NCBI RefSeq assembly: GCF_963921235.1
Contig: NC_086113.1
Coordinates: 70,804,001 to 70,868,000 of the forward strand
Direction: 5' to 3'
From: Mobula hypostoma
Taxonomy: Eukaryota
DNA length: 64,000 nucleotides
Part shown: in pieces, positions 30,101 to 59,200 of the stretch
How the letters are laid out: each line of letters starts with the position of its first letter
Position numbering within the stretch: position 1 is the stretch's first letter
Notes under the pieces: generated by a model
What the model was told of the DNA's origin: nothing
What the model saw: the letters and a program-made list of their open reading frames with translations, nothing else
Database searches by the model: none
Program-made: the position numbers and the translations under genes

Positions 30101-33100
30101 AGTCATTGCAAAATCAAGTACAGAATGGATTCAGAAAAGGAAATGAAATACATTTTCAGTTGAATTTTAAAAATCTCCAAAATGATTGAGAATGAAAATT
30201 TCTACATCAACTATTTACTTTTAAGCAACAGGCAGCGTGTTTGACAATATACTGTCACAGGGTCACACAACATGGAAATGAGCCTGAACTCATGTCTATG
30301 CTAGTCATTACCTTCCTACCTTTACTAAACCCATTTCCTAGCATCCAGCCCGTACCATTCAGCGCCATGATATCTCAAGTGCCTATCGAAATATCTCTTA
30401 TATGCTATGATTGTACTTGCCTCTATCTTCCTCTCAGGTGGTGTGTTCCAGATTTCAGGTAAAAGAAAAGTTCTTCCTCAAATCTTTTATCCCTGTTCTT
30501 AAATCAATGCCCTCACACCTCTCCAAAGATTAGAAGTTCTTCATACGAGCTATAGTCTTTTAATTTTGTGTACCCATACCAGCTACCTAGTCCTTCAGCC
30601 CACCCATTGCCAGTCTTAAGAAAGCAAACCTAGCCTATTCTGTCTGACAATATCCCAATGAATCTTCTTTGCACCTTCTCCAGTACAATCACATCCTTCC
30701 TTGGTTGTGGGGAATCAGGCCTGTGTACAGTAATCCACTAAAGCTTCACCCAGAGGTCCATGAACCAAGTAATTGGAAGAATGGACATGTAAATTTGTGA
30801 CTGATGTACATTTGGGTGTGTGTAATACAGGTGTGAACAGGGAGGTGTGTTGGTGGGAAGATCCAGGTATTTGAAACTGTTAAATGTAGTTCAAAGGAAG
30901 CATTGTTAGAATTGTCCTGAAATTTCTTTGATGTTTGGCACATAAAATGTTGTGTATTGCTGGGTCAAGCAGATCTCTTGCTCCGAAAGGGTCTCTCTCC
31001 TTCGCTCTCCTCTCCCTCCCTCTCGTGACTCCAAAATCTGTCAGCTTATTTGTGATAGTTTATCAAATAAAGGGACTGCTTCATACCGACCAGTACTTCC
31101 CTCTGTGACGACATTCATGCAACATTTGGTGTCAGGAGAGGGATTCCTTCTTGCGACCCATCGTGTGGGCCAGCAATCTCAGCGGCTGAAGTGGGTGAGT
31201 AATTTTAAAATCGGCACTCACACTTGGACCTGTTCAGGTCAGTGGTTATGGAATCGCTAGGTATCATGAACACGACGAAGAGCTGAACTGGTAGATGTTG
31301 AAGTCAGGGAATGTCAGGTCAAGAACCCTGGAGACCCAGGACAGCACTCGACCATGATCGCAACCATTCATAAACCCTTCACCCCAGGGAGAAACAGTGC
31401 AATTTGTCAGAGTCGCCTTCACTGAAAGTTGCATGTGACAATTGAGAGAACAGAAGCAACAGAAACTACAGGTGCACAGAAAGCCGTGAATCGCGTGTTA
31501 AAGTGGAATGGGATCAGTACTGTGTAATAAAGGCTGATTGCTGAAGTCATTTGAAGTTATTTACCACATGTGCTAACACCAGACATCACTCTAACAAGCC
31601 CTCTGCCTTTCACACACAAATTAAAGTGCTTGAGGATCTCACCTATCAATGACATTTTATGAACTCTTCCTACCCTCTTTGTTTCCTTTAAGAAACCCCC
31701 AACACTTTTTTTTATTCTTTGAAAAGCCTCCCATCTTTAGTTCTCTGTACTTGCCACAAACTTTCCTCTTATTGCCACTTAGCACCACAGGTTCAACTTC
31801 ACAAGATCAGCATTTAAATCTTCCTTCCTTTTCTGAATCTTTATCTCACAATTTCAGGAGAGAAACCAGCTACTAACATCAGTGTCAAAGCTCCTGACTC
31901 CCACAGCTATTTTAATAATTCTTCACCTACCCTGTCTCCCATTCTCCCAGTTCCTCTGAATCCATCATATTTGCTCTGGTGATGTCACCTGAACCTCAAC
32001 ATATCTTGCTTTCACGAAAGGGAGTTTTTAAGGAACTTTTCATGACATCATAAGGTACCGATGAATATCAGCCAATCAAGTTTTTGCCCAAAATCACCTT
32101 TGAAGTTTTGTTGAAAACATAAATCACTAGAATCAGTCTGACCTGGGGCTTTGGTTATGTGATGTACACAGGTTATCTCCTGGTTTCAAAACCTCAAAGT
32201 TATTGTAAAGCCATGGTGAGAAATGTAGTGCCTCACATAGTCTGAATTAAGGGGGAGGGTATGAACATGAATACAATCAAATAACTTCTTACAGTATTTC
32301 TCATATACATTAGTCTCCTCATGCTGAAGACAACCTTATTGTCTAGTACAGTATAGGCTGCAGACAACTGCACTTTGGAAAAATTAACTTTGTTAAATGA
32401 ACTGTGTCTGTTACCTTTCCATTATAACTTGGCTGCAAAGAATTTAAACTGCTTGTTTTTGTCGCTTCTAATCTCTTGTCAATATATTCCATGTTGGCTC
32501 TGGTTAACTTTGATTGTCTTTCTGAACCCTTGTTGCCTGTAATTTCTGTACTGATGTGTTCAGTAAAGCCAGCTGATGCTTTATTTTGTTGATCACAAGA
32601 TGATGTTTCTTGGTGGAAGGCATTCTGGATTTGTGACAGCTGGCACTGTCATCTTCAGGGGTATTTCTACTGCTGACCTTATTGTTTTAAATCGGAATTT
32701 CATCTGAAAATGTTACTCTCAATCCTTCCCTGGATCGATTACAAACATTCTTCCCCACAGAACAGAAAGAGGATTGGACTGGTGGTTGATAATTTCTGTA
32801 ATCATCTGAAAGGCAAATATGTTACAAAATAGCTGTGTGGAAAGTAAACATACTTTGTTGAATGTCTAACTCCTGAGAATGATTAAATAGTTTCATTGGA
32901 TATTTATCTTTAATATCGTTACTTGTCTTTAAAAATGTAATCAAAATTGCAAAGGAATAATGTGTTTAACTCTGAAACTTAATCACTTTTTCTGGTAAAT
33001 GACCATCATAAATAATAACATGTAATTTCTGTTGTGTATTTAATATTTCAATAATGTTTGAGTGACCTTGTATAGTCATAGTTTAATTAACCATTATCCG

Positions 33101-42100: not shown

Positions 42101-45100
42101 CAGTGTTTGTTACCTTTCTGTCAGTAAAGCTTCTCTTTGAACAAGTTGTACGAAGAGATGTTAGAGAGCTGCTGGGTGTAACAATTGTTGTCGATCAACG
42201 AGGCAGTGAGCAGATGATGTTCCATAATGTGGCACTTGGCTGGCAGAAAGCATTCTTGATCGGTGAATGCTGCTACTGTCATCCTCAGTGAGACTCCTAC
42301 AGCACCTGTATGTGGTATCTGCTTTCACACCTGGACAGATTAAGAAAATGAAAAATGGGAAATGATCAGTGTTTTGACATGAACAGGTAATTTTATCATT
42401 CCACATTTACAATAGAATATTCACTTTATGTTCATAAACATTGCAGCTTTCAGTTACCCTTTCTTAAACATATACCAGTGGTGAGATTATTTGCTGGATA
42501 TTGACATTTCCTCTGCCATAACAAAACCTGTGAGAATCCAGATTTAGTTTCTTGTTTTTCATCTAAATTTCATCTGAAAATGCTACTCTCAATGTTTCAA
42601 TGGAATAATTGCAAACATACTTCCCAACAGAATGTAAAGAGGACCAGACTGCTGACTAAAGCGATGGCAACACAGACCCCCGTGGAACACCAGGAGTCGC
42701 TAGCAGCCCACCAGAAAAGTCTCCCTTTATTCCCACCTTGCCTCCTCCCAATCAGCCACTGTTTTATCCATGCTAGTGTCACTTCGAAACGGAAAGCATT
42801 CTGCAATCAGTAATGGTTTTGGTTCTAAATGTTCCTGCCTTACTTTCACAATAACAGCAAAAGTAATTTTGAATCGTTTGGTTGGAGCAGTTAAACTTTG
42901 AAACAAACTGTCTGCAATTAAACCCAATGCACTTCATAAAATTGACACTTTTCTCATTGGCCATTCCATTTGCTTTAAACTACTATTGAATTACTGTAGC
43001 TTGGTATACAAAATCCAGTTATCTGTTTTGTAATCAACCCTGTCTAGCTTTCCAATGTAGCCATTTCTGTTTTTATTTATGGTCAGTACTCATCGATTTT
43101 GAGCCTGTGTATTCTTTCGTTTGCTGCCTTTTTTTGAACTCGACAGTCTATGTGCGTGCTGGGCCTCGTTATTTACTCATTGTTCCTCACTTTGCTTTGG
43201 TTTTAGTTTGTCCGTCTCGCTGTGCTTCAACTGGTCAGTAGCGATTTGCCTCTTGCCTATCAGCCACTGCTTTACTTACATCAGGTATCTTTCCTTTAAT
43301 ACCATGGGCTCTGAACTTGTTAAACAGCCTCATGTGTGGCACATTGTCAAAGGCCTTCTGAAAATCCAAGTACACAACATTACCATTCTCATTTGTCTAT
43401 TCTGCTTGTTATTTCTTCAAAGAATTCCGACAGATTTGTCAGGTGAGATTTGCCCTTGAGGGAATCATGCTGAATATGGCTGACTTGATCATGTGCCTCC
43501 AAGTACCCCGAAAGCACTTAACAATCAACTTAACAATCAACTCAAACAGGTAATGCCAAGCACTGAGGTCAGACGAACTGCCCCATAATTTCCTTTCTTC
43601 TTCCTCTCTCCCCTGTTTTCCAGTCTTCCGGAACCTTCCATCATCGAGTGATCATTGCAAGATCGTTACTCATGCCTCCACAGACTCTTCAGCCACCTCT
43701 TTCAAAAGACTGGGGTGTAGACCATCAGGTCCAGGTGTCGTACAATATCTACCTTCAGGCCTTCCAGTTTCCCAACACCTTCGCCCTAGTAATGGCAACA
43801 TCACACACTTCTGACTGCTGCAATCTTGAACTTCCGCCATACTACAAGTGTCTTCCACAGTGAGGAATGAAGCAAAATACTTATTTAATTTGTCTGCCAT
43901 TTCCTTGCTCTTCATTGCTACCTCTCCCGAATTGTTTTCCTGCCGTTCAATATCCACTCCCCTCTCTTCTGGTATCCTCTTCCATATCACTGGCAAGCTT
44001 ACTTTCGTATTTCAGCTTTAACTTCTTAATGACTTTTTAGTTCGCTTCTGTTAGTTTTTAAAAGCTTCTCAATCCCCTAACTTCCCAATAATTTTTGATA
44101 TATGATATGCCCTGTCTTTGGCTTTTATGTTGGCTTTGACTTCTCTTGTTAGCCATGGTTGTATCATGTTGCCCTTATAATACTTCTTCCTCTCTGGGAT
44201 GTATATATCCCGTGCTTTCCGAACTGCTCCAGAAATTACAGCCATTGCTCTACTACCATCCCTGCCAGTGTTATTTCGCATCAATTTTGACCAACTCCTT
44301 TCTCATGCCTCTGTAATTCCCTTTTCTCCACTGTAATACTGATATATTTGATTTTTGCTTCTCCTTCTCACATTTCATGGCGAATTTGATCACCTTATCA
44401 TCACTTTCCCTCAGGGTTCCTTTATCTTCAGCTCTCTCATCAATTCTGGTTCATTGCACAACACCCGATCCAGATCAGGTGATCTCTACTGGGCTTAAAC
44501 CTGAGCTGCTCTGAAAAGCCAACTCTGAGACATTCTAGAAATTTCCTCCTCTTGGGATCCCGCACCAGCCTGATTTTCCCAATCTACCTCCATAAGGAAA
44601 TCTCTCAGGACTATGTATTGTGATTTGGCCTATTGGCATGCATTTTCTATCTCTCATTTTAATTTGTAGACCATATCCTGACTACTAGTTGGTGGTCTGT
44701 GTATAACTCCTATCAGGGTCTTTTTACCCTTGCACTTCCTTCGCTCTACCCCCGACAATTAAACACCTTTTGACCTGTTGTCACCTCTTTCTGATGATTT
44801 GATTTCAGTTTTACCAACAGAGCCATACCACAGCCTCTGCCTTCCTGTCAATCCTTTCGATACAATGTGTATCCTTGGATGTTAAACTCCAGGTATAATC
44901 TTCTTTCAGTCAGAGCTCAGTGATGTCCAGAATGTCACACATGCCAATCTGTAACAATGCTACAAGTTCATCTACCTCATTCCGCATACTGCATGCATTC
45001 AAATATAACACCTTCAGTCCTGTATTCATCACCCTTTTCAATTTTGGCTACCTTTTACATTGCATCTCATCCTGTTGACAGCAATTTTGCCCTGTCATTA

Positions 45101-48100
45101 GCTCCGTCTAGCAAGGAGTCTCACTACACACTGCCTCTGTTTGTAAACCAACTACCTCTTTCTCAGCACTGTTATCCCAGTTACCATCCACGTGCCAAAT
45201 TAGTTTAAACCCTCCAGAACAATTCCAGCAAACCTGCCTGCAGGACATTGGTCCCCCTTGGGTTCAGGCGTAACCTGTGCCTATTGTGCACGTCGAAACT
45301 TCGCAGAAGTGTTCCCAATGATCCAAAAATCTGAAGCCTTGCACCCAGCAGCAATTCCTCAGCCCTGCATTTACCTGCTGAGTCATCATATTCTTCTGCT
45401 CACTGGTATATGAGATAGGCTGCGATCCAGAGATTACTGCCCTGGAGGTCCTCTCTTTAGCATTCTACCTCAATCCCCAAAATCTCTCTTCAGGACCTCC
45501 TCACCTTGTCAACCCATGTCATTGGTGCCAATATGTACCAAGATTTATGTAATCTTTGTAACCTATAGATTACAATAATTACATTATAATTTGAGTGCTA
45601 TGTTCAATTTACACTGAATAGCTCAGAATCTAACAAATATGATCTGTTGCCTGCAGTTTTGTTAAGGTACAATCTGTCATCAATATGGATAAACTTGCTT
45701 GTTGAGAGTCCACACGATATTCAGCAAGGACCCGCAAGGCACCATGCCAACAGAATCTGGTCACAAGGGCTGCCAGACAGAAGTCTGCCTAAGAAACATC
45801 TTAGAAAACCTTTGACTGTCAAAGTTGTGAATGGAAATTTTAAGAAATAGGAGCTGGAATCAGTCATTTGGCACTTCAAGCATCCTCTTTTACCTAGTAA
45901 ACCATTTCCTGCTTTATTCCCATTTCTTCTGGTTTCCTCGATATCTAGAAATCGATCAATTTTGAATGAACCAAGGAGTGAGGCACCAGGGTTCTCTCAG
46001 ATAGACAATTCCAACAATTCATCCTCCTTCATGTGAAGAATTCTCTTGTCATCTGGTCCTAAATGCCCGATTGTTTCTTCTGAGATTCTAACCCCTGATT
46101 CCAGACTCCCCAGCAAGCTGGGATCGCTTGCATCTCTGCATCCAGCTGGTCCACAGAAGATTATAGCTTTACTATTGTCACTGAGATACCCAGAAAAAAT
46201 TGTTTTGCCAGCCATCCAGACAGATAATTTCATCACATCAGTAGATTGAAATAAAAGAAGGAATTAAACAATGATGGAATACAGAATAAAGTATTACAGT
46301 TACAGAGACAGTGCAGTGCAGGGTGACAGTAAGGTACAAGGCCAAAATGAAGTAGATTGTGAGGTCGGGAGCCCATCATATAGTACTGGGGGGGCACTCA
46401 ACATGGGATAGAAGCTGTCCTTGAGCCTGGTGACGAGATCCTTTCCAGTTTCTGTACCTTCTGTGCTATTGGAGGAAGTAGAAGAGAAAAAGTCCATGGT
46501 GGGTGGGGCCTTTGATCAAATCAAATCAGTTTTGCTTGTTTGGCCACGCGAGGCCGCTGATTTCCAAACATGCCACCATCTTATGTGAGCAACACACATC
46601 AAAGTTGCTGGTGAACGCAGCAGGCCAGGCAGCATCTCTAGGAAGAGGTACAGTCAATGTTTCGGGCCAAGACCCTTCGTCAGGACTAAGGCAAAAGGGA
46701 TACAGGCTGGAGAAGGGAGAGGGTCATGGGACGGGAGGTCTGGGGAGAAGAAAAGGGGGAGGGGGGGAAAGCCCAGAGGATGGGCAAGTGGTATATTCAG
46801 AGGGACAGACGGAGAAAAAGGAGAGTGAGAGAAAGAATGTGTGTATAAAAATAAGTAACAGATGGGGTACGAGGGGGAGGTGGGGCATTAGCGGAAGTTT
46901 GAGAAGTCAATATTCATGCCATCAGGTTGGAGGTTACCCAGACGGAATAGAAGGTATTGTTCCTCTAACCTGAGTGTGGCTTCATCTTTACAGTAGAGGA
47001 GGCCGTGGATAGACATATCAGAATGGGAATGGGATGTGGAATTAAAATGTGTGGCCACTGGGAGATCCTGCTTTCTCTGGTGGACAGAGTGTAGGTATTC
47101 AGCAAAGCGGTCTCCCAGTCTGCGTCGGGTCTCACCAATATATAAAAGGCCACATCGGGAGCACCGGACGCAGTATATCACCCCAGACTCACAGGTGAAG
47201 TGTCGCCTCACCTGGAAGGACTGTCTGGGGCCCTGAATGGTGGTAAGGAGGAAGTGTAAGGGCATGTGTAGCACTTGTTCCGCTTACAAGGATAAGTGTC
47301 AGGAGGGAGATCAGTGGGGAGGGATGGGGGGGACAAATGGACAAGGGAGTCAGGTAGGGAGCGATCCCTGCGGAAAGCGGGGCGGGGGGAGGGAAAAATG
47401 TGCTTAGTGGTGGGATCCCGTTGGAGGTGGCGGAAGTTACGGAGAATTATATGTTGGACCCAGAGGCTGGTGGGGTGGTAGGTGAGGACCAGGGGAACCC
47501 TATTCCTAGTGGGGTGACAGGAGGATGGAGTGAGAGCAGATGTGCGTGAAATGGGGGAGATGCATTTGAGAGCAGAGTTGATGGTGGAGGAAGGGAAGCC
47601 CCTTTCTTTAAAAAAGGACATCTCCCTCATCCTGGAATGAAAAGCCTCATCCTGAGAGCAGATGCGGCGGAGACGGAGGAATTGCGAGAAGGGGATGGCA
47701 TTTTTGCAAGAGACAGGGTGAGAAGAGGAATAGTCCAGATAGCTGTGAGAGTCAGTAGGCTTATAGTAGACATCAGTAGATAAGCTGTCTCCAGAGACAG
47801 AGACAGAAAGATCTAGAAAGGGGAGGGAGGTGTCGGAAATGGACCAGGTAAACTTGAGGGCAGGGTGAAAGTTGGAGGCAAAGTTAATGAAGTCAACGAG
47901 CTCAGCATGCGTGCAGGAAGCAGCGCCAATGCAGTCGTCGATGTAGCGAAGGAAAAGTGGGGGACAGATACCAGAATAGGCACGGAACATAGATTGTTCC
48001 ACAAACCCAACAAAAAGGCAGGCATAGCTAGGACCCATACGGGTGCCCATAGCTACACCTTTAGTTTGGAGGAAGTGGGAGGAGCCAAAGGAGAAATTAT

Positions 48101-50186
48101 TAAGAGTAAGGACTAATACCCGCTAAGTCCTGTTGGTATAGGGACGGTAGGAAAGTCTCAGATAAATCAACATTAGCATCAGCAGCCTTTTTGGACATGC
48201 TTCGTGTCACTACACATGCAGAATACACATCAGCATCTATGGGCTGGTCCTCAGCAGCAGCAGGCTTGCTTGTGAGCTGAACTGCTGGATTAACGTCTCC
48301 ACCTGCAAGGTCATTACCGAGTAAAACATCAACATGGTCTATCGGTAGTTCAGATCGGACCCTTATTATGACTGGTTTCGATACCAAGTCGCATTTCAAG
48401 ATTATCTCATGTAAAGGCACGGCCTCTGTTCCCCTTCTAATGCCCTTAATGATGTTTACTTCCCCAGTATCTGTCTCAGCACCAAATTCCAAAACATTCT
48501 TTAATATCAGTGACTGGAAAGCTCCAGTATCTCTCCAGATTCTTACTGGGACTGGGTTTGACCCCTCCTGCACAGACACAAACCCTTCTGAAATAAATCT
48601 CTCGAGTCCCTCCCGAACTTGGTTCGACCTCTCCTTCTTCAGCGATGTTTTAGCTGTCTGAACGCAGCCAGTTGGGGGTTTCTCTTTCTCTTTTCCTTTT
48701 CCCCTCTTTGTAGCAAAACAATTTGACGCCACATGGCCAGGTTTTCCACAAGAGTAACACTTGAAACTGGGAAATTTCTCCCCGACTGTTTCCCTTCCTC
48801 CTTACTTTTATCACTAATCCCCGGTTTACTCTCTGGTTTAGCCAGTGGATTATCTCTACTCCCTTGTGGGTTAATCTTAGTGGGAAAAAACTTAACTTAA
48901 TGAGTTAGGGCATATTCGTCTGCTACTTTAGCAGATTCTGACAGTGTTGCTGCCCCTTTCCCATCTCAGTGCGTCCTTATCTCAGCCAAGCCGCAGTTTT
49001 TAAACTCTTCAATCAATATCAACTCCTTCAAGTTGCCAATATCCTCATCCGCCTCTTTTGAAGCGCACCACCGATCAAAGTACACACGTTTCTCATGGGC
49101 AAACTTCACATACGTTTGGTTCCAGGACTTAGTCAAACCTTGAAACCTTTGTCTGTACGCCTCCAGGACTAACTCATAAGCCTTAAACGCAGCATCCTTC
49201 ACTTTATCATAATCCTTTGCATCTTCAAGAGACAGGGCTGCATGTGTTTGCTGAGCCTCCCCCTTAACCACACTCTGTAGTAACACCGCCCACTGCTCCC
49301 ACGGCCACTCCCGATTACAGGCCACTTTCTCAAAATGTAGGAAATACCTCTCAATTTCTGCTTCATCAAATGGAGGCACTAACCTAATTTCTCGACTGAC
49401 ACTAAACCCCTCCTCACGGTTTGCCATCTGAGCGTTCTGTTGCTATCTCTCCCTTTCAAACGCTCTCCGTCTATCTGCCTCTCTAGCCTCATGGACCCTC
49501 TGTTTTTCTGCGGCCTCAGCCTTGAGCTGTAGTAATTCCAATTTCAGTTTCAACTCAGCTTCAGCCTCACATGTACCTTTCCTTCAGCAAATAGCTCTAT
49601 CGCCCCCACCTCAAACGTTCCCTTAGCTACGTAATGCTGGGCTACTAACATCTGTATCTGAATTTTCCTCATTGTAGTATTCACCTTCAGTTTTAACTTT
49701 TGAGCAATTCCAAACAGCAAATCCTTCTTAGCATCATCCAACGCCTCAGGGGTTGGTTCCAACATAAACTTATTAACTTCAAACTCCATTTCTGCTGATA
49801 TTCCACACAACCAAATCACACGGAAATTTCCCCAATCAATTCAAACCAGCCTCCCGACCAATTTGCTCATATCGCGGACGCAGCCCCCAATTTTGTCACA
49901 TACCCCATGACGGGAATAAAGAACCAGCAGAGATGGAAAACACTTTGGAATCCAGTATTGTTATAAACTAATAATATTTATTAGTAACTACATGATACAG
50001 TAATGTAAATGTAGATAAATCAAACAGGTTAGCAATGATTATATATATAAGTAAGTATATCAGTAAGTGTGGAAATATATGCATTTGAAAAAACAAGCTT
50101 CTTTAAGTCTAGGGGTAAAAAGATACAGTCTTACAATGTTGAATAAAATTCAGTTCAGTTCAGTTCGTGGTATTTAGTTGAGTAGT

Positions 50187-50222
<36 letters not shown>

Positions 50223-53200
50223 GTTGAGTCTTCAGGTGAGCTGTTGCCGTCAATCTTCTCGTCATCCTCCAAAATCTTTCACAAGATACTGACTGTGACT
50301 TTAACAACAAAGGGGACTGTACTTCGGTGTGGTGGAGCTGTCTACCCAGGCCAGGGTCGAACACATGGACAATTCCCCACCGGTCCTGCCTTTGAATTTT
50401 CACTGGCAGAGCAATTGGATCAATCCGCCTGATTGATCCTCCAAAACCCACTTTCTCTGCGGGCACAACAATGCTCCTTCAGTGTCCTGATCATGTGTCT
50501 GAGGTCTGTATCATCTGACCTCCTATTTATAGTCATAGTCATAGTCATACTTTATTGATCCCGGGGGAAATTGGTTTTCGTTACAGATGCACTATAAATA
50601 GTAAATAGTAATAAAACCATAAATAGTTAAATAGTAATATGTAAATTATGCCAGTAAATTATGAAGTAACTCCAGGACCAGCCTATTGACTCAGGGTGTC
50701 TGACCCTCCAAGGGAGGAGTTGTAAAGTTTGATGGCCACAGGCAGGAATGACTTCCTGTGACGCTCTGTGCTGCATCTCGGTGGAATGAGTCTCTGGCTG
50801 AATGTACTCCTGTGCCCAACCAGTACATTATGTACTGGATAGGAAACATTGTCCAAGATGGCATGCAACTTAGACAGCATCCTCTTTTCAGACACCACCG
50901 TCAGAGAGTCCAGTTCCATCCCCACAACATCACTGGCCTTACGGATGAGTTTGTTGATTCTGTTGGTGTCTGCCACCCGCAGCCTGCTGCCCCAGCACAC
51001 AACAGCAAACATGATCACACTGGCCACCACGGACTCGTAGAACATCCTCAGCATCATCCGGCAGATGTTAAAGGACCTCAGTCTCCTCAGGAAATAGAGA
51101 CGGCTCTGACCCTTCTTGAAGACAGCCTCAGTGTTCTTTGACCAGTCCAGTTTATTGTCAATTTGTATCTCCAGGTATTTGTAATCCTCCACCATGTTCC
51201 CACTGACCCCTGGACGGAAACAGGGGTCACCGGTACCTTAGCTCTCCTCAGCTCCTCACCACCAGCTCCTTAGACTTTTTCACATTAAGCTGCAGATAAT
51301 TCTGCTCACACCATGTGACAAAGTTTCTTACCGTAGCCCTGTACTCAGCCTCATCTCCCTTGCTGATGCATCCAACTATGGCAGGCTTATCTCACCAGGC
51401 TGAGCATCACCTGCCATTCAGAGATAAACACCTACAATGGTTGGTATATAGGCTTGTATGCAACATTTTGGACCAGTGGAAATGGTCCAGAAGGGTTGTA
51501 TGGAAACTATTATTACCATTTTTCTTAACAACTAATTTCATTACTTAGCCTAATAGGTTAGATTTACCACAGTACATAATTATCTATTTAAATGTTTATT
51601 TTGCTTTTATATCATCTCAATGTGTACTTAAGAATGTATAAATAATTGTAGTTTTATACATATAAAAAATGGAAAAGGTTATATGTGTGAAAAAAGTACA
51701 TGATAATTGTGAACTCCTTATCCAAATAAAAATAAAATTTAAAAAAAAAGAAAGTAACATCAATAACGTGCTGTCGGTCACCATAGCAACCTTCGAGCGG
51801 CTCAGTGTTATCTCCAAAGTAAAAATACAAAGTTACCTCCTGTGCCCTGACGTGACAGTCCAACCGTCAATCTTCATCTCTCTCTCTTTTCAAAACAAAC
51901 CATCGATGACAAATGACTCTCTCTGTCTCTCTTCAAGCTGTTAATAGGGGCACTCCTGGATCCCCTCACAATACAGCAAAATCACCATCCCTGGCAGCAG
52001 TCCACAGAATCATATACCTCATTCCTTCAAGGGCAAGTTCATTTATTTATGGTTAAAGTGATTAAAACAATATAGTTAAAAACTACTTTTCTTAATGAAA
52101 CTCTTCTGAAAATTCCAATACACTGAACCTTCTCGTTCTCCCTAGTCTATTCTGCTGCAATATACTCTAGTCAAAGATGATTTTCTTCTCAATATTCCAT
52201 GTTTATTATTCTGTTCAAAATACTGTTCTTGCATTCGTCATCACTAATTCCATCTCTTTCCTTACAAATGAGACTGACAATTCAAAAATATTCAAAAAAT
52301 GTTGCATATCGCATGAACAATTAAAACACTAAAGAAAATGATGTCCCTATCAAAATTAACATATTTAAATATTTAAATAAATAAATGAATTTCCTCAAAT
52401 CAAATTATAAATAAAATGTACAATTCAACCTGTGTTTCCATTCTTCTTGGCAGCCATAAAACTTCAATTTGATACCCCTTGCTTGTTTAACACTGGCATA
52501 GATATTCCAATTGATTGTCCAGCATTTCGAGCAACTTCCTGTTCCACGAACTGCCCACGTTTCTCAACAAATTCGCCCAAGTAATTCACAAAAAGGGAAT
52601 TCATTATACAGCAAGATCTGAGGCAGTCAGATTTGATGGTCAAATGTGAATCACATCACTTACCATTTTGATTATTAGATGCTCCATCCCACTTGCACAT
52701 CTGTGCTCGATTCACGTAATTCTGCTCATCTGTGTCATAACTGAAGACCTTCTTCATCTGCTGACTGAAATTAATAGTGAGACAGGAAGCTAAATAGGCT
52801 TCATAATAATATCAAATGTAATAAACATTCATACAAAACCAAAATACAAGGGATGAAATAAAAAACAGAACATTCTGCAACAACTCAGTTTAGATACCGT
52901 TGGCAGAGGATTGTTTGCTTCACACTTCTCTGCAATTAATCCTTCACCAATCTCATTATCAAACAACTATCAGTGGATTGAAATACACCTTCTCTGATTC
53001 ATAAAGATTAAAATATTAAATGAAAACAGAGAACATTAATAAAAATACCTTATTCACCCAGCTACATTCTTTGATAAATGTATACTATAAGAATAGAACT
53101 ATTTCCTGACCTCTCCTGTCTTTTATCTACTTCTGACGTCTCATATTGTTCTTGTGAAATTAAGTCAAATTTGGCAGGATTTCTCTCAGTTGCACAGACA

Positions 53201-56200
53201 TGCCTGAGATCTGTTGATGACAAACCATTATTGAGATATTGCAATTAATAATAATGCAACATACACATCAGAATTTGAAAGGACTGACAGCTAATTAGTC
53301 CATCAAATAAAATATTCTGAGGAATTACCAGCCATGCAACATATAGACCTACTTGACTAACAATCAGTACAGCAGCAAATTATCAGCTGTGTATGATTTG
53401 GCAATTTGCAAGAGCTGCATAATGGATGAAGACCTGGCACATTGGTAAATACTGTATACTCTCTACAGATGGAATCTCAGTAGCTACAGACTCTACCTAT
53501 AGATTCTTCCAGAGGTCACTGTCATAGTTACTCTATTATTCCATATTAACAAACTCAAAAAAAGCACTTGCAGTAAAACTCCAATTGTCTACCACACTCA
53601 GCTTTTGGTAGTGTCAGACTAACTGAATTTCTGGGCATCTTTTCTCAAGTCTAACCACCATGCAGATCATGCTCTCTTCTTGCCGCTTTAAAAACAGAAA
53701 CCTGACATGTCACATCCCAAGGTTCAGGAACAGCTACTTTCCTACAACCATTAGCTGTTTGAACTGTCCCGCAATACCCTCATCCTACCGCAGCACTACC
53801 ATTGATGTGTGTCTGATTGTGTGAAACAGGACGTGTAAAAAAAATCACAGTAACTTTCTTCACTGTGGGTATAAATTACACTCTGTCGCCACTGAATGTC
53901 TGTTCATGGCCTTTTGCTGCTGTACCACATCCATTTCAAGGTTCAACACATTGTGCATTCAGAGTTGCTCTTCTGCATCCCCTATTGTAACGTGTTGTTT
54001 CTTGAGTTTCTGTTGCATTTCTGTCAGCTTGAACGGGTTGGGAAATTTTCCTTGAACCTCTCTCATTTACAAGACGTTTTTGCGCACTGAACTCTTGCTC
54101 ACTGGATATTTTTTGGTTTTCCACAGAATTCTCTGTGAACTCTCAAAATCTCTCCCCCTCTCCACCTTAACAGTGATGAAGTTTCACTTCTCCTCACTTA
54201 CCACACAATGATCCTCCGTATCCAACACTTCACACTCCACAACTAACGCCTCTCCAAAAGCATGCTAGCACGGAAAGTATTTTACCAACTTCCCACCCCC
54301 GATTGTTCACGAGGATCATGTACTCCGTGATTTCCTTCTTCATTCATCCCTCCCCACTGATCTCCGAAATGTAACACCTCCCTTCTCCTCCATTCAGGGT
54401 CCCAAACAGTCCTTCCAGATGAGACAATATTTAACCAGTGAACACGTTGGAGTCGTCTATTGTGTCTGGTACTCCTGATGCAGCCTCCTCTATATTGGTG
54501 AGACTCGTCGGAAACTGGGGACAGCGTTGTCATGCACCTAGCTCCATCTGCTGATAGTGGTATTTCACAGTGGCAAAGCATTTTAATTCTGATTCATATC
54601 CCACTCCAACGTGTTGCTCCATGGCTTCCCCCTGTGCCTGTAGGAGACCACCCTCAGGGTCGTGGACTAACACCTTATATTCTGTCTCGGTAACCTCCAG
54701 ATGGGAACTGCCCTTATTTCTCAACAAATTTGGCCAAGTAATTCACAAAAAGGAAATTCATTATACAGCAAGATCTGAGGCAGTCAGGTTTGATGGTCAA
54801 ATGTGAATCACTTCACTTACCATTTTGATTATTAGATGCTCCATCCCACTTACACATCTGTGCTTGATTCACGTAATTCTGCTCATCTGTGTCATAACTG
54901 ATGACCTCTTCATCTTATGACTGAAATTAATAGCGAGACAGGAAATTAAATTGGCTTCATTATAATATCAAATGTAATAAACATTCATACAAAAGCAAAT
55001 TACAAGGGATGAAATAAAAAACAGAACATTCTGCAACAACTCAGTTTAGATACCATTGGTAGAGGATTGTTTGCTTCATACTTCTCTGCAATTAATCCTT
55101 CACCAATCTCATTATCAAACAACTATCAGTGGATTGAAATACACCTTCTCTGATTCATAAAGATTAAAATATTAAATAAAAACAGAGAACATCAATAAAA
55201 ATACCTTATTCATGCAGCTACGTTCTTTGATAAATGTATACTATAAGAATAGAACTATTTTCTGACCTCTCCTCCCTTTCACCTACCTTTGATGTCTCAC
55301 ATTGTTCTTGTGAAATGAAGTCTAATTTGTCAGGATTTCTCTCAGTTGCACAGACATGCCTGAGATCTGTTGATGACAAACCATTATTGAGATATTGCAA
55401 TTCATAAAAACGCAACATACACATCAGCCCTTTAAAGGACTGACTTCTAATTAGTCCATCAAATAAAATATTCTGAGAAATTATCAGTGATGCAACATCT
55501 AGACCTACATGACTAAAAATTAGTAGTATATCAGCAAATTATCAGCTGTGTTTGATTTCGCAATGTGCAAGAGCTGCTTCAGTTAATTCAGCAGGATATT
55601 GGGCAGTTATTTAATTTTCCCCTTCAAGAATGAACGAGATCACTTATCGACATATAATTTACCAGCTAAACTGTGGAAGAATAATTTAAATATATTGTAG
55701 AAAGTTTAGTGAAGTTTCTCCCACTCCTCATTCAGGATATCAGGCAGATACCGTATAAAACATGAGAGTAAAATGACTCAAGATAGTTTTACACAGGTAT
55801 GCTTTTTACGGAATATAAAGAAACAATTTTAAGGGTGATTCCCTGGTTTGAAAAAGACAATGCAGAGCTGAAGTTGCTTAAGCTGATTGAACAATATATT
55901 GAACAGATTTCTATAACTTTAAACAACATCTTCCTACCCATTCCCACCCTATTCTCAAATGCAACTTTATCCATTGCATATCCACATAAAAACAGACGAT
56001 ACATTTAAGTGTCATTTGGAGGGAGATTTAGAAAATAAATCTTAAGAAACAAACATTGTGCAGACTATGCATCAGTTGTTTTAATCGTTTTGCATATCCA
56101 AAAGGATACAAACAATTATGGCTGCATAAATACATGGATGAAGACCTGGCACATTGGTAAGTACTGTATATTCTGTACACATGGAATCTCATTAGCTACA

Positions 56201-59200
56201 GACTCTACCTATAGATTCTTCCCGAGGTCACAGTCATAGTTACTCCATTGTTCCATATCAACAAAGTCAAAAAGAAAGCACTTCTAGTCAAACTCCAATT
56301 GTCCATCACACTCAGATTTTGCTGGTGCCAGACTAACTGAATTTCTGGGCATCTTTTTCCAAGTGTGACCACCATGCAGATCATGCTCTCTTCTTGCCAC
56401 TGGAAGTACAGAAATCCCACATCCCAAGGTTCAGGAACAGCTACTTTCCTACAACCATTAGCTGCTTGAACTGTCCCGCAATACCCTCATCCTACCGCAG
56501 CAATGGAACAAATTGACAATCTCCTGCAATACCATTGATTTGTGTGTGATTCTGTGAAACAGGACATGTAAAATAAATCACAGTCATTTTCTTCACTATC
56601 TGTATGATTTACACTCAGTTGCCACTGAATGTCTGTCCATGGCCTTTTGCTGCTGTACCACATCCACTTCAATGTCCAATTTATTGAGCATTCAGAGATG
56701 CTCTTCTGCATAACATTGTTGTAATGTGTTGTTGCTTGAGTTTCTGTTGAATTTCTGTCAGTTTGAACTTATTGGGCAATTCTGCTCTGACCTCTCTAAT
56801 TTACAAGATGTTCTTGCGCACTGAACTCTTGTTCACCGGATTTTTTTTATTTTTCCACACAATTCTCTTTAAAGGACACTTCTTCCCCTCTCTACCTCAA
56901 CTGTGACAGAGTTCCTCTTGTCCCCACCTACCAGCCAATGATCCTCCGTATCCAACACGTCACCCTCCACAACTAATGCCTCTCCAAAAGCATGCTAGCA
57001 CTAAAGGTATTTTGCCAATTTCCCACTCCGATTTTTCACAAGGATCACGAAGTCTGTGATTTCCTTGTTCATTCATCTCTCCCCCTGATCTCCGAAGTGT
57101 AACACCTCTCTGTACATGTACTGCCTTCTCCTCCAAACGGTCCTTCCAGGTGAGGCCATATTTAACCAGTGAATATGCTGGAGTTGTCTGTAGAGTCTGG
57201 TTCTCCCAATGCGGCCTCCTCTATATTGGTGAGTCCCATGGGAAACTGGGGGACTGCTTTGTCATGGAAAGTGGTAAAGCATTTTAATTCTGATTCATAT
57301 TCCATTCCAACATGTTGCTCCATGACTTCCTCTTGTGTGAAGATGAGGCCACCCTCAGGGTGGCGGACTAACATTTTATATTCTGTCTGGGCAGCCTCCA
57401 ACATGATGCCATAAGTATTGATTTCTCCTTCCAGTAATAAAAAATTTCTGGCAAACGTTACCCAGTGAGACAGATGTCAAATCATCAGGACTCTTCACGC
57501 GTCAGATTATTGGAATTTTAGTGTAATTGAACTCAGGTCTGCTGCTTTCACTCCAAACAATGCCAGCACAATAATTACTGAAGAACATGCACAATATGTT
57601 ACAAGGTCAAATCTTTCATCAGACAATTTGATGTTAAGTAACCCACGCTTACCTAATTTCATCAAACTTGGTAAGAAGCGAATTACACACTGTCTATAAT
57701 TCTCCTCAGTCGTTGTAGCTGGATTTAGCCGTAAATCTAGCTCAGTTAAATGGATCAGATGGCGAAAGCTGGAAATTTCTTTCAACGTCTGAACGTTATT
57801 AAAATACAGGCTTAATTTTTCCAGTTCCTGTAAATACTTCAAACCCTACACAACGAAAGACTTACAGTTATTCATGAAACAACTGACAATTTGGAATTTA
57901 ATACTGCACTTTCTAAATTTTCCCCAAGAAACAAATTAAAACCAACTGCGATAACAAATTATGTTACAAATCTGTCAACATCAATAGACTGAAACTGGAG
58001 ATTCAATCAGCTTTAATTGTAAGAACTGTTACAATAGGTTCTGCCTGAGAAAGCAAAATGTGTACAACAGTTGTCTATCAGGCACACAAACTGAATCAAC
58101 TTATTCAATTTTCATATGTTTCAGGATTTTGAAAACATGAATATTTCTGATATCGCAAAGATTTCAAAATACTATGAAGATTCATTGAGGGATTAAAATA
58201 TCTCAAAAAGGTTTCAAATTATGAAAGAAAATTAAATAAAACAGTGAGAATGCTTAGAATTATATTAGGGTATTTAAGTGCACTCAGCAAGGTCTTCTTC
58301 CAGCCTTTCATTTCCACTGAAATGAATGGTCTCACTGATTGCGATTTATTCCATGGTATGTATCTGATCATTACATCCACCAATGTCAGCTTGTGAAAAT
58401 CCAGGGAAAAATGTGCCTTCAAGTACAGTAACTTTCATGAGAAAGACACATGTACTGAGAAATAGTGAATCAGAATCAGGTTTAATATCAGTGGCAAATG
58501 TCGTGAGATTTGTTAACTTAGCAATAGCAGTGGAAAGCAAGACAAGATAACTATAGAAAAAAAATCAATTACAATCAGTATATAATGTATCTTTAATAGG
58601 TAAATTAAAAATGGTGCAAAGTAAAATAAATAAAGTGAGGTAGTGTTCATGTGTTCAATATCCGTTCAGAACTCGGGCAGCGGTGGAAGAAGCTGTTCCT
58701 GAATCGCTGAGTGTGTGCATTTAGGCTTCTGTACCTCCTTCCGGATGGTAATAATGAGAAGAGGGCACGTCCTGGCTGATGGGAGGTCATTAATAATGGA
58801 CAGTGTCTTTCTGAGACGACTTGGATAGCAGAGAGGCTAGTACCCTTGAGGGAGCTAATTATAACTCTCTGAAGCTTCTTTAATACTGAGCAGTAGACAA
58901 CCCCACTGGACAGCGAAGCAGCCTGTTAGAATGCTCACCTCGGTACAATTGTAGCAACTCAGCATCAGCTCGGTTCCATTTCCCATCAAGTCATGGCCCA
59001 TTGGATCCAATCATCAAAGTGAAATTGACTTGTGAGTTGTATTATTATGCAAAGTCACTGGTTAGCTTTAATACACATCACCATTCTAGATCTTTAAAGC
59101 TACACTTCCATTTTTAACCTCAACTCAAAATAACACCCTGAACCCGCTTTCTTAAAGGAAAAATGATGCTGATGGATTGCAGGAGTTTCTGTCCAAACAC

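What the first reader, a model, noticed from the sequence alone, without database searches (positions are those of the whole stretch)
52547..57410. Tandem exon-pair duplication giving candidate mutually exclusive exons plus a poison exon
Seen: exons 4+5 of the LRRC36-like gene are duplicated in tandem. Both exon-4 copies (55267-55366 and 53111-53210) are exactly 100 bp, open, and keep their splice sites, but differ at several residues (PDKLDF..C..K.GE.E vs PAKFDL..Y..E.DK.Q). Each runs phase 1 to 2, so including both shifts the frame. The exon-5 copy between them (54821-54920) lost 1 bp and stops in every frame, yet retains tttcag/gtaagt. Inference: productive mRNAs must be 3-4A-5B or 3-4B-5B, and 5A inclusion would trigger NMD. 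This looks like a lineage-specific splicing switch directly after the LRR cap.
Basis: partly seen in the sequence, partly recalled or inferred. Interest (0 to 1): 0.7.

Follow-up and report, generated by a model that had tools for sequence, protein, structure and literature searches.

The report
Duplicated exon pair hijacks LRRC36 splicing
In a ray's LRRC36 gene, exons 4 and 5 really are duplicated in tandem, but RNA shows the decayed upstream pair is spliced in through a newly created donor and the intact exon 4 is skipped, so the message stops just after the LRR domain rather than switching between alternative exons.

Summary
A head-to-tail duplication (copy A 57410-54706, copy B 54705-52548, minus strand) doubles exons 4 and 5 of the LRRC36 orthologue of a myliobatiform ray. 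Both exon-4 copies are 100 nt and open. Exon 5A has lost 1 nt and has stops in all three frames.

The mutually-exclusive-exon reading is not supported. Spliced contigs from two runs of the same species show exon 3 joined to 4A. 4A then uses an internal donor (AAG|GTAGGT at 55287, giving an 80-nt exon) to join 5A. 5A joins 5B, and in one contig it joins exon 6. Exon 4B is essentially uncovered. This message hits TAA at codon 2 of 5A, directly after the LRR cap.

In relatives (Hypanus sabinus, Hemitrygon akajei) the 4+5 pair (201 nt, 67 codons) is a frame-neutral module included two to four times in series. A related species here still splices 4B to 5B.

The window's gene has further lesions: a frameshift in exon 6, and a TAA plus a frame change in the ~32.7 kb exon. 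It therefore looks like a transcribed, decaying family member.

This is a well-documented example of a known process, not a new splicing switch. The scan noted the same stretch once before (s1-143301).

The parts
57653..57845 (-). Exon 3 (193 nt, phase 0 to 1): last LRR and LRR cap, ...RFLPSLMKL
   Evidence: Sequence and splice sites. 88% and 80% aa identity to Mobula hypostoma and Hemitrygon akajei models. Donor joined to 55366 in X1 and X2.
54706..57410 (-). Duplication unit, copy A (upstream in the gene): TE-like part R1, the 557-nt segment, proximal intron 3, exon 4A, intron 4, exon 5A, proximal intron 5
56135..57410 (-). R1: old interspersed-repeat sequence at the 5' end of the unit, 85.3% identical to R2
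   Evidence: 65-73% matches at four other regions of the window (about 5.5-6.8, 20.8-21.1, 40.3-40.5 and 46.9-47.2 kb). Contig depths in the hundreds to thousands in parts of R1 and R2 in all four runs (table 2).
55578..56134 (-). 557-nt segment present only in copy A. It is ancestral, not an insertion, because it is contiguous with both flanks in the related species.
   Evidence: X4 records 19-21 and X8 records 28-29 bridge both edges (table 8).
55267..55366 (-). Its last 20 nt (55286-55267) are not covered by any spliced contig.
   Evidence: X1 depth is 0 in bin 55080-55271.
55287..55366 (-). Exon 4A' actually used (80 nt), ending at the internal donor AAG|GTAGGT (GT at 55286-55285)
   Evidence: Joint 54920|55287 with GT..AG ends, X1 depth 84.3 and X2 4.3. 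U1 pairing is -11.1 kcal/mol against -5.5 for the ancestral donor.
54821..54920 (-). Exon 5A (100 nt): 1-nt deletion near 54907, TAA at 54917-54915 in the frame set by 4A', stops in all frames. It is included in the dominant transcript.
   Evidence: Joints 54920|55287 and 52764|54821, and the loose end at 54819 that continues into exon 6.
52548..54705 (-). Duplication unit, copy B (downstream): R2 (54705-53422), proximal intron 3, exon 4B, intron 4, exon 5B, proximal intron 5
53111..53210 (-). Exon 4B (100 nt): the conservative copy, 76-82% identical to relatives' modules. Skipped in this species' runs, but spliced to 5B in the related species.
   Evidence: In X1 only a depth-3.1 variant contig lies on it and X2 has none. 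X4 record 16 joins 53111|52764.
52664..52764 (-). Exon 5B (101 nt, open, 82-94% identical to relatives' modules). Joined to 5A upstream; its donor at 52664 is used.
   Evidence: Joint 52764|54821 in X1 at depth 82.6; X2 record 9 runs on past 52664.
55331..55402 (-). 72-nt tract identical in both copies (matching 53175-53246), spanning the exon-4 acceptor and the first 36 nt of the exon
   Evidence: P about 0.006 at 11% divergence. Whether this reflects a conversion patch or constraint on the acceptor and cap end is inference.
42114..42330 (-). Exon 6 (217 nt), the target of the minor 5A>6 splice. It is one base short relative to relatives, which shifts the frame (QQLL|HPAAL*).
   Evidence: The X1 loose-end letters are found at 42299-42328. 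tblastn with P0002 and P0177 splits into two frames.

Best explanation
The gene is the LRRC36 orthologue (CEP72 paralogue) of a myliobatiform ray, on the minus strand.

Exons 4 and 5 together are 201 nt, or 67 codons. Duplicating the pair does not disturb the frame. In rays this pair behaves as an amplifiable protein-repeat module placed just after the LRR cap. The window carries two such modules from a tandem duplication of a 2.2-2.7 kb unit.

The downstream pair (4B, 5B) has stayed close to the family consensus. The upstream pair has decayed:
- 5A lost one base and acquired TAA.
- Substitutions in 4A (the codons that read K, V, G) created a strong donor, AAG|GTAGGT, 20 nt upstream of the weak ancestral donor GAG|GTCAGA.

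4A comes first in the transcript and now has the better donor, and 5A keeps a consensus donor. Shown: the assembled transcripts are exon 3 - 4A' (80 nt) - 5A - 5B, with a minor 5A - exon 6 form, and 4B, which keeps only the weak donor, is left out. Inferred: the donor strengths are the reason for this choice.

Inferred consequence: translation stops at the second codon of 5A. That gives an LRR-only product of roughly 160 residues (by analogy with the relatives' exon 1), or a message subject to nonsense-mediated decay.

The gene has further frame-breaking lesions in exon 6 and in the ~32.7 kb exon. The locus most likely no longer encodes full-length LRRC36 and is a transcribed, decaying member of a multi-copy ray gene family.
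For: - Duplication and exon anatomy.
- Spliced joints with GT..AG ends in this species' runs: 55366|57653 (X1 84.3, X2 4.3), 54920|55287 (X1 84.3, X2 4.3) and 52764|54821 (X1 82.6). The contigs match the window with 0 differences.
- 5A to exon 6: the loose end at 54819 is found at 42299-42328.
- 4B coverage: X1 bin depths 0.79 and 1.58, X2 0.
- Donor strengths: -11.1 for the new donor, -5.5 for the ancestral donor, and -3.3 for the homologous 4B site.
- Frames...TSK|S* in 3-4A'-5A.
- Serial in-frame modules in relatives: P0174 Hypanus sabinus has three, and P0177 Hemitrygon akajei has several plus a 4-5-6-7 block.
- 4B and 5B are closest to all relatives' modules; 4A is the outlier.
- The related species splices 4B>5B (X4 record 16).
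- Further lesions.
- Gene identity: Callorhinchus LRRC36 (P0005, P0173) aligns from exon 2 to the C-terminal MLQESHR exon.
Against: - Only two small runs of unknown tissue from one study were available, and they are contigs, which drop rare isoforms.
- The body of 5B has depth about 101 in X1 against 82.6 for the 5A>5B joint. Up to about a fifth of 5B-containing molecules could therefore enter from elsewhere, for example from 4B.
- 4B, 5B and the five C-terminal exons are open and well conserved, which would fit a still-functional gene that makes a productive 3-4B-5B form in another tissue.
- The spliced form is abundant relative to intronic contigs, which is not what efficient NMD would give.
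- 80 + 100 = 180 nt keeps the frame into exon 6 apart from the TAA, so the 4A'-5A pair may have been coding until recently.
- The exon 6 and 32.7 kb lesions were not checked against reads.
Confidence: 0.62

Rival explanations
1. Regulated unproductive splicing. The B pair gives the productive mRNA (3-4B-5B-6) in some tissue or stage. The A pair acts as a two-exon poison cassette, and its inclusion, dominant in the tissues sampled here, switches the gene off. This is the part of the reader's poison-exon idea that survives.
For: - 4B and 5B stay close to the relatives' modules (76-82% and 82-94%).
- C-terminal exons are open and 63-85% identical to Hemitrygon.
- The 5B body depth exceeds the 5A>5B joint depth by about 18 in X1.
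- A low-depth exon-4B-like contig exists in X1.
- A 72-nt identical tract spans both exon-4 acceptors.
Against: - A 3-4B-5B-6 message would still meet the exon-6 frameshift, and the TAA and frame change in the 32.7 kb exon.
- The only 4B-like contig in X1 differs from the window at three positions, so it may come from another copy or allele.
- X2 has no 4B coverage at all.
Confidence: 0.15
2. The truncation is the product. The rewired splice makes a stable short protein consisting of the LRR domain and cap plus about 28 residues, which has a function of its own, for example as a competitor of full-length family members encoded elsewhere.
For: - The spliced 3-4A'-5A form is far more abundant than intronic contigs (depth 84 against 3-6 in X1).
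- Relatives have annotated short N-terminal models of 201-294 aa (P0175, P0002, P0176, P0001).
- Rays have several loci of this family.
Against: - The stop lies more than 55 nt upstream of later exon junctions, the textbook context for NMD (general knowledge).
- Exon 3 differs from the related species as much as the introns do (17/190 nt against 7-8%), which suggests little constraint on the LRR domain.
- The short models in relatives may be annotation truncations.
- There is no protein evidence.
Confidence: 0.12
3. One reading: 4A and 4B are mutually exclusive coding exons (3-4A-5B or 3-4B-5B), giving two protein variants directly after the LRR cap.
For: Both copies are 100 nt, in the same phase, open, and have identical acceptors. 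Including both without 5A would shift the frame. Tandem exon duplication is the known source of mutually exclusive exons (PMC9013439, PMC9741552).
Against: - In every contig 4A is joined to 5A, not to 5B, and through a donor that removes its last 20 nt.
- 3-4A'-5B would be out of frame.
- Exon 4 diverges like the neighbouring intron, with 8 nonsynonymous and 3 synonymous differences.
- Three of the five 4A-specific residues are simply the new splice site.
- Relatives include the pairs serially.
Confidence: 0.04
4. Assembly artefact: the duplication or the 1-nt deletion in 5A is an error of the genome assembly.
For: Tandem near-identical segments and single-base indels are typical assembly errors.
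Against: - The copies differ by 5-15%.
- RNA contigs contain 4A-specific, 5A-specific (TAA and deletion included) and 5B sequence joined in one molecule, with no difference from the window.
- Intronic contigs of X1 match both copies exactly (records 1-8).
Confidence: 0.02

Closest known systems
Tandem exon duplication giving mutually exclusive exons (the class reviewed in PMC9013439 and PMC9741552; e.g. ATE1 exons 7a/7b, PMC7797038)
   Same: Adjacent homologous exons of equal length and phase, produced by tandem duplication inside a gene. Including both exon-4 copies alone would shift the frame.
   Different: A pair of exons was duplicated, and the pair is frame-neutral. In the RNA available, exactly one exon-4 copy is included, but always the same one, truncated, and always together with a broken exon 5 copy. 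There is no sign that both variants are coding or conserved.
Internal protein-repeat expansion by exon-module duplication, as in the relatives' own LRRC36 genes (Hypanus sabinus XP_059806674.1 has three modules; Hemitrygon akajei P0177; Narcine bancroftii XP_069757504.1 has about six copies of a central module)
   Same: The same 67-codon exon 4+5 module lies at the same place after the LRR cap, duplicated in tandem. Inclusion is serial: here 4A'-5A is followed by 5B.
   Different: Here the upstream module is broken (a 1-nt deletion and a TAA), its exon 4 is shortened by a new donor, and the downstream exon 4 is skipped. No in-frame repeat protein results.
Poison (PTC-bearing) cassette exons and pseudo-exon activation by a created 5' splice site
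   Same: An exon with stops in every frame is spliced in and truncates the ORF. A few substitutions created a strong donor that overrides a weak natural one.
   Different: Inclusion looks constitutive rather than regulated in the runs seen. The exon is a decayed duplicate, not a conserved regulatory element. NMD sensitivity is untested.
Transcribed pseudogene within a recently expanded gene family
   Same: There are several independent frame-breaking lesions, transcription and splicing continue, and other loci of the family exist in related species.
   Different: The LRR exons, 4B, 5B and all C-terminal exons are still open. An intact copy elsewhere in this genome was not shown.

Membership tests
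Mutually exclusive exon cluster from tandem exon duplication | Adjacent homologous exons of the same length and phase, with intact splice sites | tested here: met
   4A and 4B are both 100 nt and phase 1 to 2, with identical acceptors and GT donors.
Mutually exclusive exon cluster from tandem exon duplication | Each mature mRNA contains one or the other copy, and both choices are observed | tested here: not met
   Only 4A, as the 80-nt 4A', appears in spliced contigs of X1 and X2. 4B is uncovered apart from one depth-3.1 variant contig. The sample is limited to two runs of contigs.
Mutually exclusive exon cluster from tandem exon duplication | Both alternatives give an open, productive reading frame | tested here: not met
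   4A' is joined to 5A and stops at TAA. 3-4A'-5B would be out of frame.
Mutually exclusive exon cluster from tandem exon duplication | Both copies are kept under purifying selection | tested here: inconclusive
   There are 8 nonsynonymous and 3 synonymous differences, and the divergence equals that of the upstream intron. 4A has 5 residues unique against all relatives and 4B has 1. The exon is too short for a firm test.
Poison exon (regulated unproductive splicing) | A cassette exon that introduces a premature stop when included | tested here: met
   5A has stops in all three frames and is included.
Poison exon (regulated unproductive splicing) | A productive isoform that skips it coexists, and the ratio is regulated | tested here: inconclusive
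   Among the joints listed for X1 and X2, none skips 5A (88 further joints were not shown). There are only two runs, of unknown tissue.
Poison exon (regulated unproductive splicing) | The transcript is degraded by NMD | not testable with these tools
   Needs NMD inhibition or decay measurements.
In-frame repeat expansion by exon-module duplication | The duplicated module's length is a multiple of three | tested here: met
   4B+5B is 201 nt. The A module is 200 nt as annotated and 180 nt as spliced.
In-frame repeat expansion by exon-module duplication | Modules are included serially in mRNA and read as a protein repeat | tested here: not met
   This holds in relatives' gene models (P0174, P0177). 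In this species 4A'-5A-5B is serial, but 4B is skipped and 5A carries a stop.
LRRC36 (CEP72/LRRC36 family) | N-terminal LRR domain with cap, a central region with no recognised domain, and a C-terminal coiled coil (PMC3431927). Orthology to annotated LRRC36. | tested here: met
   Callorhinchus milii LRRC36 (XP_007905756.2) aligns to window exons from 59896 to 26721. The relatives' products hit Pfam LRR_9 and LRR_4.
Transcribed pseudogene | Several independent disabling lesions in otherwise recognisable exons | tested here: met
   The lesions are the 5A deletion and TAA, a 1-nt loss in exon 6, and a TAA plus a frame change in the 32.8-32.4 kb exon. Only the 5A lesions were confirmed in reads.
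Transcribed pseudogene | No transcript with an intact full-length frame | tested here: inconclusive
   The dominant contigs carry a stop, but contigs from two runs cannot exclude rare intact isoforms.

The most novel reading that the evidence does not exclude
The exon-pair duplication plus a newly created donor has turned this ray's LRRC36 copy into a dedicated producer of an LRR-domain-only protein. This would belong to a wider and so far undescribed pattern in batoids, where LRRC36 has multiplied into several loci with a variable number (1 to 4 or more) of a 67-residue module after the LRR cap, and where short N-terminal products recur.
Probability: 0.12. Interest if true: 0.5.

Novelty: new member of a known kind. 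Interest (0 to 1): 0.3.

Why it matters
The case shows with direct junction evidence what can happen after a tandem exon duplication other than mutually exclusive splicing. The upstream duplicate decays. A few substitutions give it a stronger donor than the original exon has. It then captures the splicing machinery and truncates the protein.

It is a useful warning for sequence-only prediction of mutually exclusive exons. Equal length, equal phase and intact splice sites were all present, and the prediction was still wrong. The neighbouring exon should also be considered, because here the pair is frame-neutral.

It also flags LRRC36 in rays as a gene family with recurrent module amplification and several loci. 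That may interest people working on centrosomal proteins or on elasmobranch genome evolution, but no new mechanism is involved.

Tried and rejected
- Fetching the relatives' genomic loci to count modules directly failed. The look-up of encoding contigs returned no DNA for Mobula hypostoma (gene range too long) or Hemitrygon akajei (file too large).
- A search with the ORF spanning 4A plus its flanking intron, meant to catch ORFs on relatives' genomic contigs, found nothing.
- No run is on record as RNA. The runs were accepted as containing RNA because they hold GT-AG spliced joints.
- Exon 1 could not be found in the window, so the length of the truncated ORF is only an estimate by analogy with relatives.
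- Word searches of earlier scan notes for LRRC36 and CEP72 found nothing.
- NAHR between flanking repeats as the origin of the duplication was considered and rejected. There is no third R copy downstream of 52548, and the flank there is unique.
- The 557-nt copy-A-only segment was first taken for an insertion. This was rejected because the related species has it contiguous with both flanks, so copy B lost it.
- Compensation between the -20 nt donor shift and the -1 nt deletion (180 nt, in frame with exon 6) was considered as evidence for selection on a 4A'-5A coding path. It is not persuasive: the chance is 1 in 3, the TAA blocks that frame, and the major form continues into 5B, which breaks the frame anyway.
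- No complex or structure prediction was run, because no claim here depends on one.

Full report
**What is in the sequence**

The gene lies on the minus strand. Exon 2 is 59863-59735. Exon 3 is 57845-57653 and ends in phase 1 (...SLMKL, then g|). Both have consensus splice sites.

Downstream, the repeat finder and a global alignment show a single head-to-tail duplication: copy A is 57410-54706 and copy B is 54705-52548. Each unit contains:
- about 1.28 kb of old interspersed-repeat sequence (R), with 65-73% matches at four other regions of the window and contig depths in the hundreds to thousands in parts of both copies in every run;
- the proximal part of intron 3;
- a 100-nt exon 4;
- a 346-nt intron 4;
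- exon 5;
- about 110 nt of intron 5.

Copy A also has a 557-nt segment (55578-56134) that copy B lacks. Contigs of a related species run through both of its edges, so it is ancestral and copy B lost it (table 8).

- 4A (55366-55267) and 4B (53210-53111) are 100 nt, open, with identical acceptors and GT donors.
- 5B (52764-52664) is 101 nt and open.
- 5A (54920-54821) is 100 nt after losing one base, keeps tttcag| and |gtaagt, and has stops in all three frames.

**Divergence between the copies is uneven**

| Segment | Identity |
|---|---|
| R | 85.3% |
| Proximal intron 3 | 89.4% |
| Exon 4 (11 differences) | 89.0% |
| Intron 4 | 95.4% |
| Exon 5 | 95.0% |

The upstream and downstream halves differ significantly (Fisher p = 5e-9). 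Exon 4 is no different from the intron just upstream of it (p = 1.0) and only nominally more diverged than intron 4 (p = 0.03).

Its differences are 8 nonsynonymous and 3 synonymous over 79.7 and 19.3 sites. That is neither clearly purifying nor clearly positive.

The higher similarity from intron 4 onward is best explained by later gene conversion (inference). A 72-nt perfectly identical tract spans the exon-4 acceptor and the first 36 nt of the exon (55402-55331 matching 53246-53175; P about 0.006 at 11% divergence). It could be a small conversion patch or constraint on the acceptor and the end of the cap.

**What the gene is**

The exon-3 peptide finds ray proteins first:
- Mobula hypostoma XP_062889671.1 (88% identity);
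- Hemitrygon akajei XP_072888608.1 (80%);
- then Narcine bancroftii and Callorhinchus milii LRRC36 XP_007905756.2.

The Callorhinchus protein and a 776-aa Hemitrygon protein (P0177) align to window exons all the way from exon 2 to 24107. The whole LRRC36 orthologue is therefore in the window, apart from exon 1, which I could not find.

LRRC36 is the vertebrate paralogue of CEP72. It has N-terminal LRRs, a central region with no recognised domain, and a C-terminal coiled coil (PMC3431927).

**The relatives change the meaning of the duplication**

Exons 4 and 5 together are 201 nt, or 67 codons, so the pair is frame-neutral.

- Hypanus sabinus LRRC36-like (XP_059806674.1, P0174) contains the pair three times in series, all in frame (DLRPV...SQQMKKVF...NNQS, three times).
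- Hemitrygon P0177 contains several pairs and even a repeated 4-5-6-7 block.
- Narcine has about six copies of a central module.
- Hemitrygon has models at three loci and Hypanus at two, on different chromosomes.

In rays this gene family multiplies, and the 4+5 pair behaves as an amplifiable protein repeat. That led to the mutually-exclusive idea.

**What the RNA shows**

Two runs of the window's own species (X1, X2) and two of a relative (X4, X8) were laid on 52200-57950. They are Logan contigs, not on record as RNA, but they hold GT-AG spliced joints.

X1 also has low-depth intronic contigs that match the window exactly, which confirms the species.

In X1 and X2:
- One contig joins exon 3 to 4A (55366|57653; depths 84.3 and 4.3).
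- The same contig leaves 4A at an internal donor (54920|55287), so the exon used is 80 nt (4A', 55366-55287).
- It then enters 5A at the expected acceptor.
- X1 goes on from the 5A donor to the 5B acceptor (52764|54821; depth 82.6).
- One further X1 contig runs from the 5A donor into letters that lie at 42299-42328. That is exon 6, which starts at 42330.
- 4B has none in X2. In X1 it has only a depth-3.1 contig that differs from the window at three positions (it reads DLRPV...KFDF), so it probably comes from another copy or allele.
- The 5B donor at 52664 is used (X2 record 9).

In the relative, X4 record 16 joins 4B to 5B (53111|52764), which is the ancestral pattern.

**Why the splice moved**

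The ancestral exon-4 donor is weak: GAG|GTCAGA or GAG|GTCAGG, matching 6 of 9 consensus positions, with U1 pairing of -5.5 and -6.0 kcal/mol.

In 4A the codons that read S-E-V-D-K in every relative and in 4B have become S-K-V-G-E. In DNA that is TCA AAG|GTA GGT GAA, a donor matching 7 of 9 positions with -11.1 kcal/mol. The homologous 4B site (GAA|GTAGAT) scores -3.3.

So three of the five residues that make 4A look "diverged but open" are simply the new splice site. 4A is also the outlier among all modules (61-73% identity to relatives, against 76-82% for 4B). 5B is 82-94% identical to relatives' exon 5.

That the stronger, first-transcribed donor wins, and that 4B is skipped for lack of exon definition, is inference from the scores.

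**Coding consequence**

With 4A' the frame enters 5A in phase 0 and reads ...ETSK|S then TAA (54917-54915). The TAA comes from a GC-to-TA change relative to 5B.

The major form 3-4A'-5A-5B-6 would in any case be out of frame (281 nt against 201 nt). The minor form 3-4A'-5A-6 (180 nt) would be in frame with exon 6 but for the TAA. With the distal 4A donor, the 1-nt deletion gives a stop 17 codons into 5A.

Every route through 5A therefore ends the ORF just after the LRR cap. By analogy with the relatives' 24-residue exon 1, the product would be about 160 residues.

The stop lies far upstream of later junctions, so NMD is expected by the usual rule. Yet the spliced contig is much deeper than the intronic ones. 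This is unresolved.

**State of the rest of the gene**

Against P0002, P0174 and P0177:
- Exon 6 (42330-42114) is one base short (QQLL then HPAAL*, where relatives read QQLLSPSNSL).
- A degenerate extra copy of the central exon with a stop lies at 42655-42542.
- The exon at 32806-32409 has an in-frame TAA (EIPI*NNK, against EIPIENSK) and changes frame near 32610.

This agrees with the scan's other note on this window (s1-143833). I checked it by alignment but not with reads.

The C-terminal exons (29610-24107) are open. Exon 3 differs from the relative's contig at 17 of 190 nt, as much as the introns do (7-8%), and at 13 of 64 residues from Hemitrygon. That suggests weak constraint, with the caveat that paralogues may be being compared.

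**Age of the duplication**

Copy A and copy B differ by 11-15% in the part not homogenised. This species and the relative differ by about 8% in introns (table 8). 4B shares F (KF) and Q (RQE) with Mobula, while 4A shares L (KL) and E (REE) with Hemitrygon.

A contig of the relative (X8 record 27) follows 5A-like sequence 16 nt across the A/B junction into R2. That is too short to count as bridging.

Together these suggest the duplication predates the split of the two species. This is inference only.

**Verdict**

Its core is wrong for the data available: there is no alternation of 4A and 4B, 5A is not skipped, and a different donor is used.

The best account is a tandem duplication of a frame-neutral exon module, recurrent in ray LRRC36. 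Here the decayed upstream copy has captured splicing through a newly created donor and truncates the reading frame, in a gene that carries further lesions.

Rivals that remain open:
- tissue-specific productive use of 4B-5B (0.15);
- a functional LRR-only product (0.12).

This is a well-documented new instance of known processes, so interest is modest.

Noticed in passing
window 42114-42655: Exon 6 (42330-42114) is one base short relative to Hemitrygon and Hypanus: QQLL then HPAAL*. Just upstream, at 42655-42542, lies a degenerate copy of the next central exon with an in-frame stop (SDEI*MKNKK).
   Followed up: partly
window 32409-32806: The central exon has an in-frame TAA (EIPI*NNK against EIPIENSK in Hypanus) and changes frame near 32610. 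This matches the scan's note s1-143833.
   Followed up: partly
window 53147-53212 (run X1): A depth-3.1 contig on exon 4B differs from the window at 53161, 53201 and 53203. It reads DLRPV...KFDF, like the relatives. It is probably a second LRRC36 copy or allele expressed at a low level in this species.
   Followed up: no
window 52647-52780 and 54689-54882 (runs X4, X8): The related species has at least two different exon-5-bearing contigs (3, 10 and 20 differences, with unequal depths). One follows 5A-like sequence 16 nt into the start of R2. The relative probably also has several modules or copies.
   Followed up: partly
window 57653-57845: Exon 3 (LRR and cap) differs from the related species at 17 of 190 nt, as much as the introns do (7-8%), and at 13 of 64 residues from Hemitrygon. 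The LRR domain seems weakly constrained or fast-evolving in this family.
   Followed up: partly
window 53544-54700 and 56230-57575: Parts of the R segments reach contig depths in the hundreds to thousands in all four runs, with many short joints between R1 and R2 positions. R is a high-copy, probably transcribed, interspersed repeat. Weaker copies lie in the window at about 5.5-6.8, 20.8-21.1, 40.3-40.5 and 46.9-47.2 kb.
   Followed up: partly
window 43000-51300: Intron 5 is filled with retroelement ORFs: reverse-transcriptase-like at 51237-50686 and 48122-47211, and gag or zinc-knuckle-like at 49442-48103. This accounts for the roughly 10 kb between exon 5B and exon 6.
   Followed up: no
window 57846-57879 (run X2): X2's spliced contig 3-4A'-5A continues 34 nt into intron 2 upstream of exon 3 instead of joining exon 2. 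This may be intron-2 retention, an internal start, or a graph artefact at low depth.
   Followed up: no
window 63121-64000: Two masked N runs (63371-63507 and 63668-63902) lie within CT-rich low-complexity sequence. Exon 1 was not found between here and exon 2.
   Followed up: no
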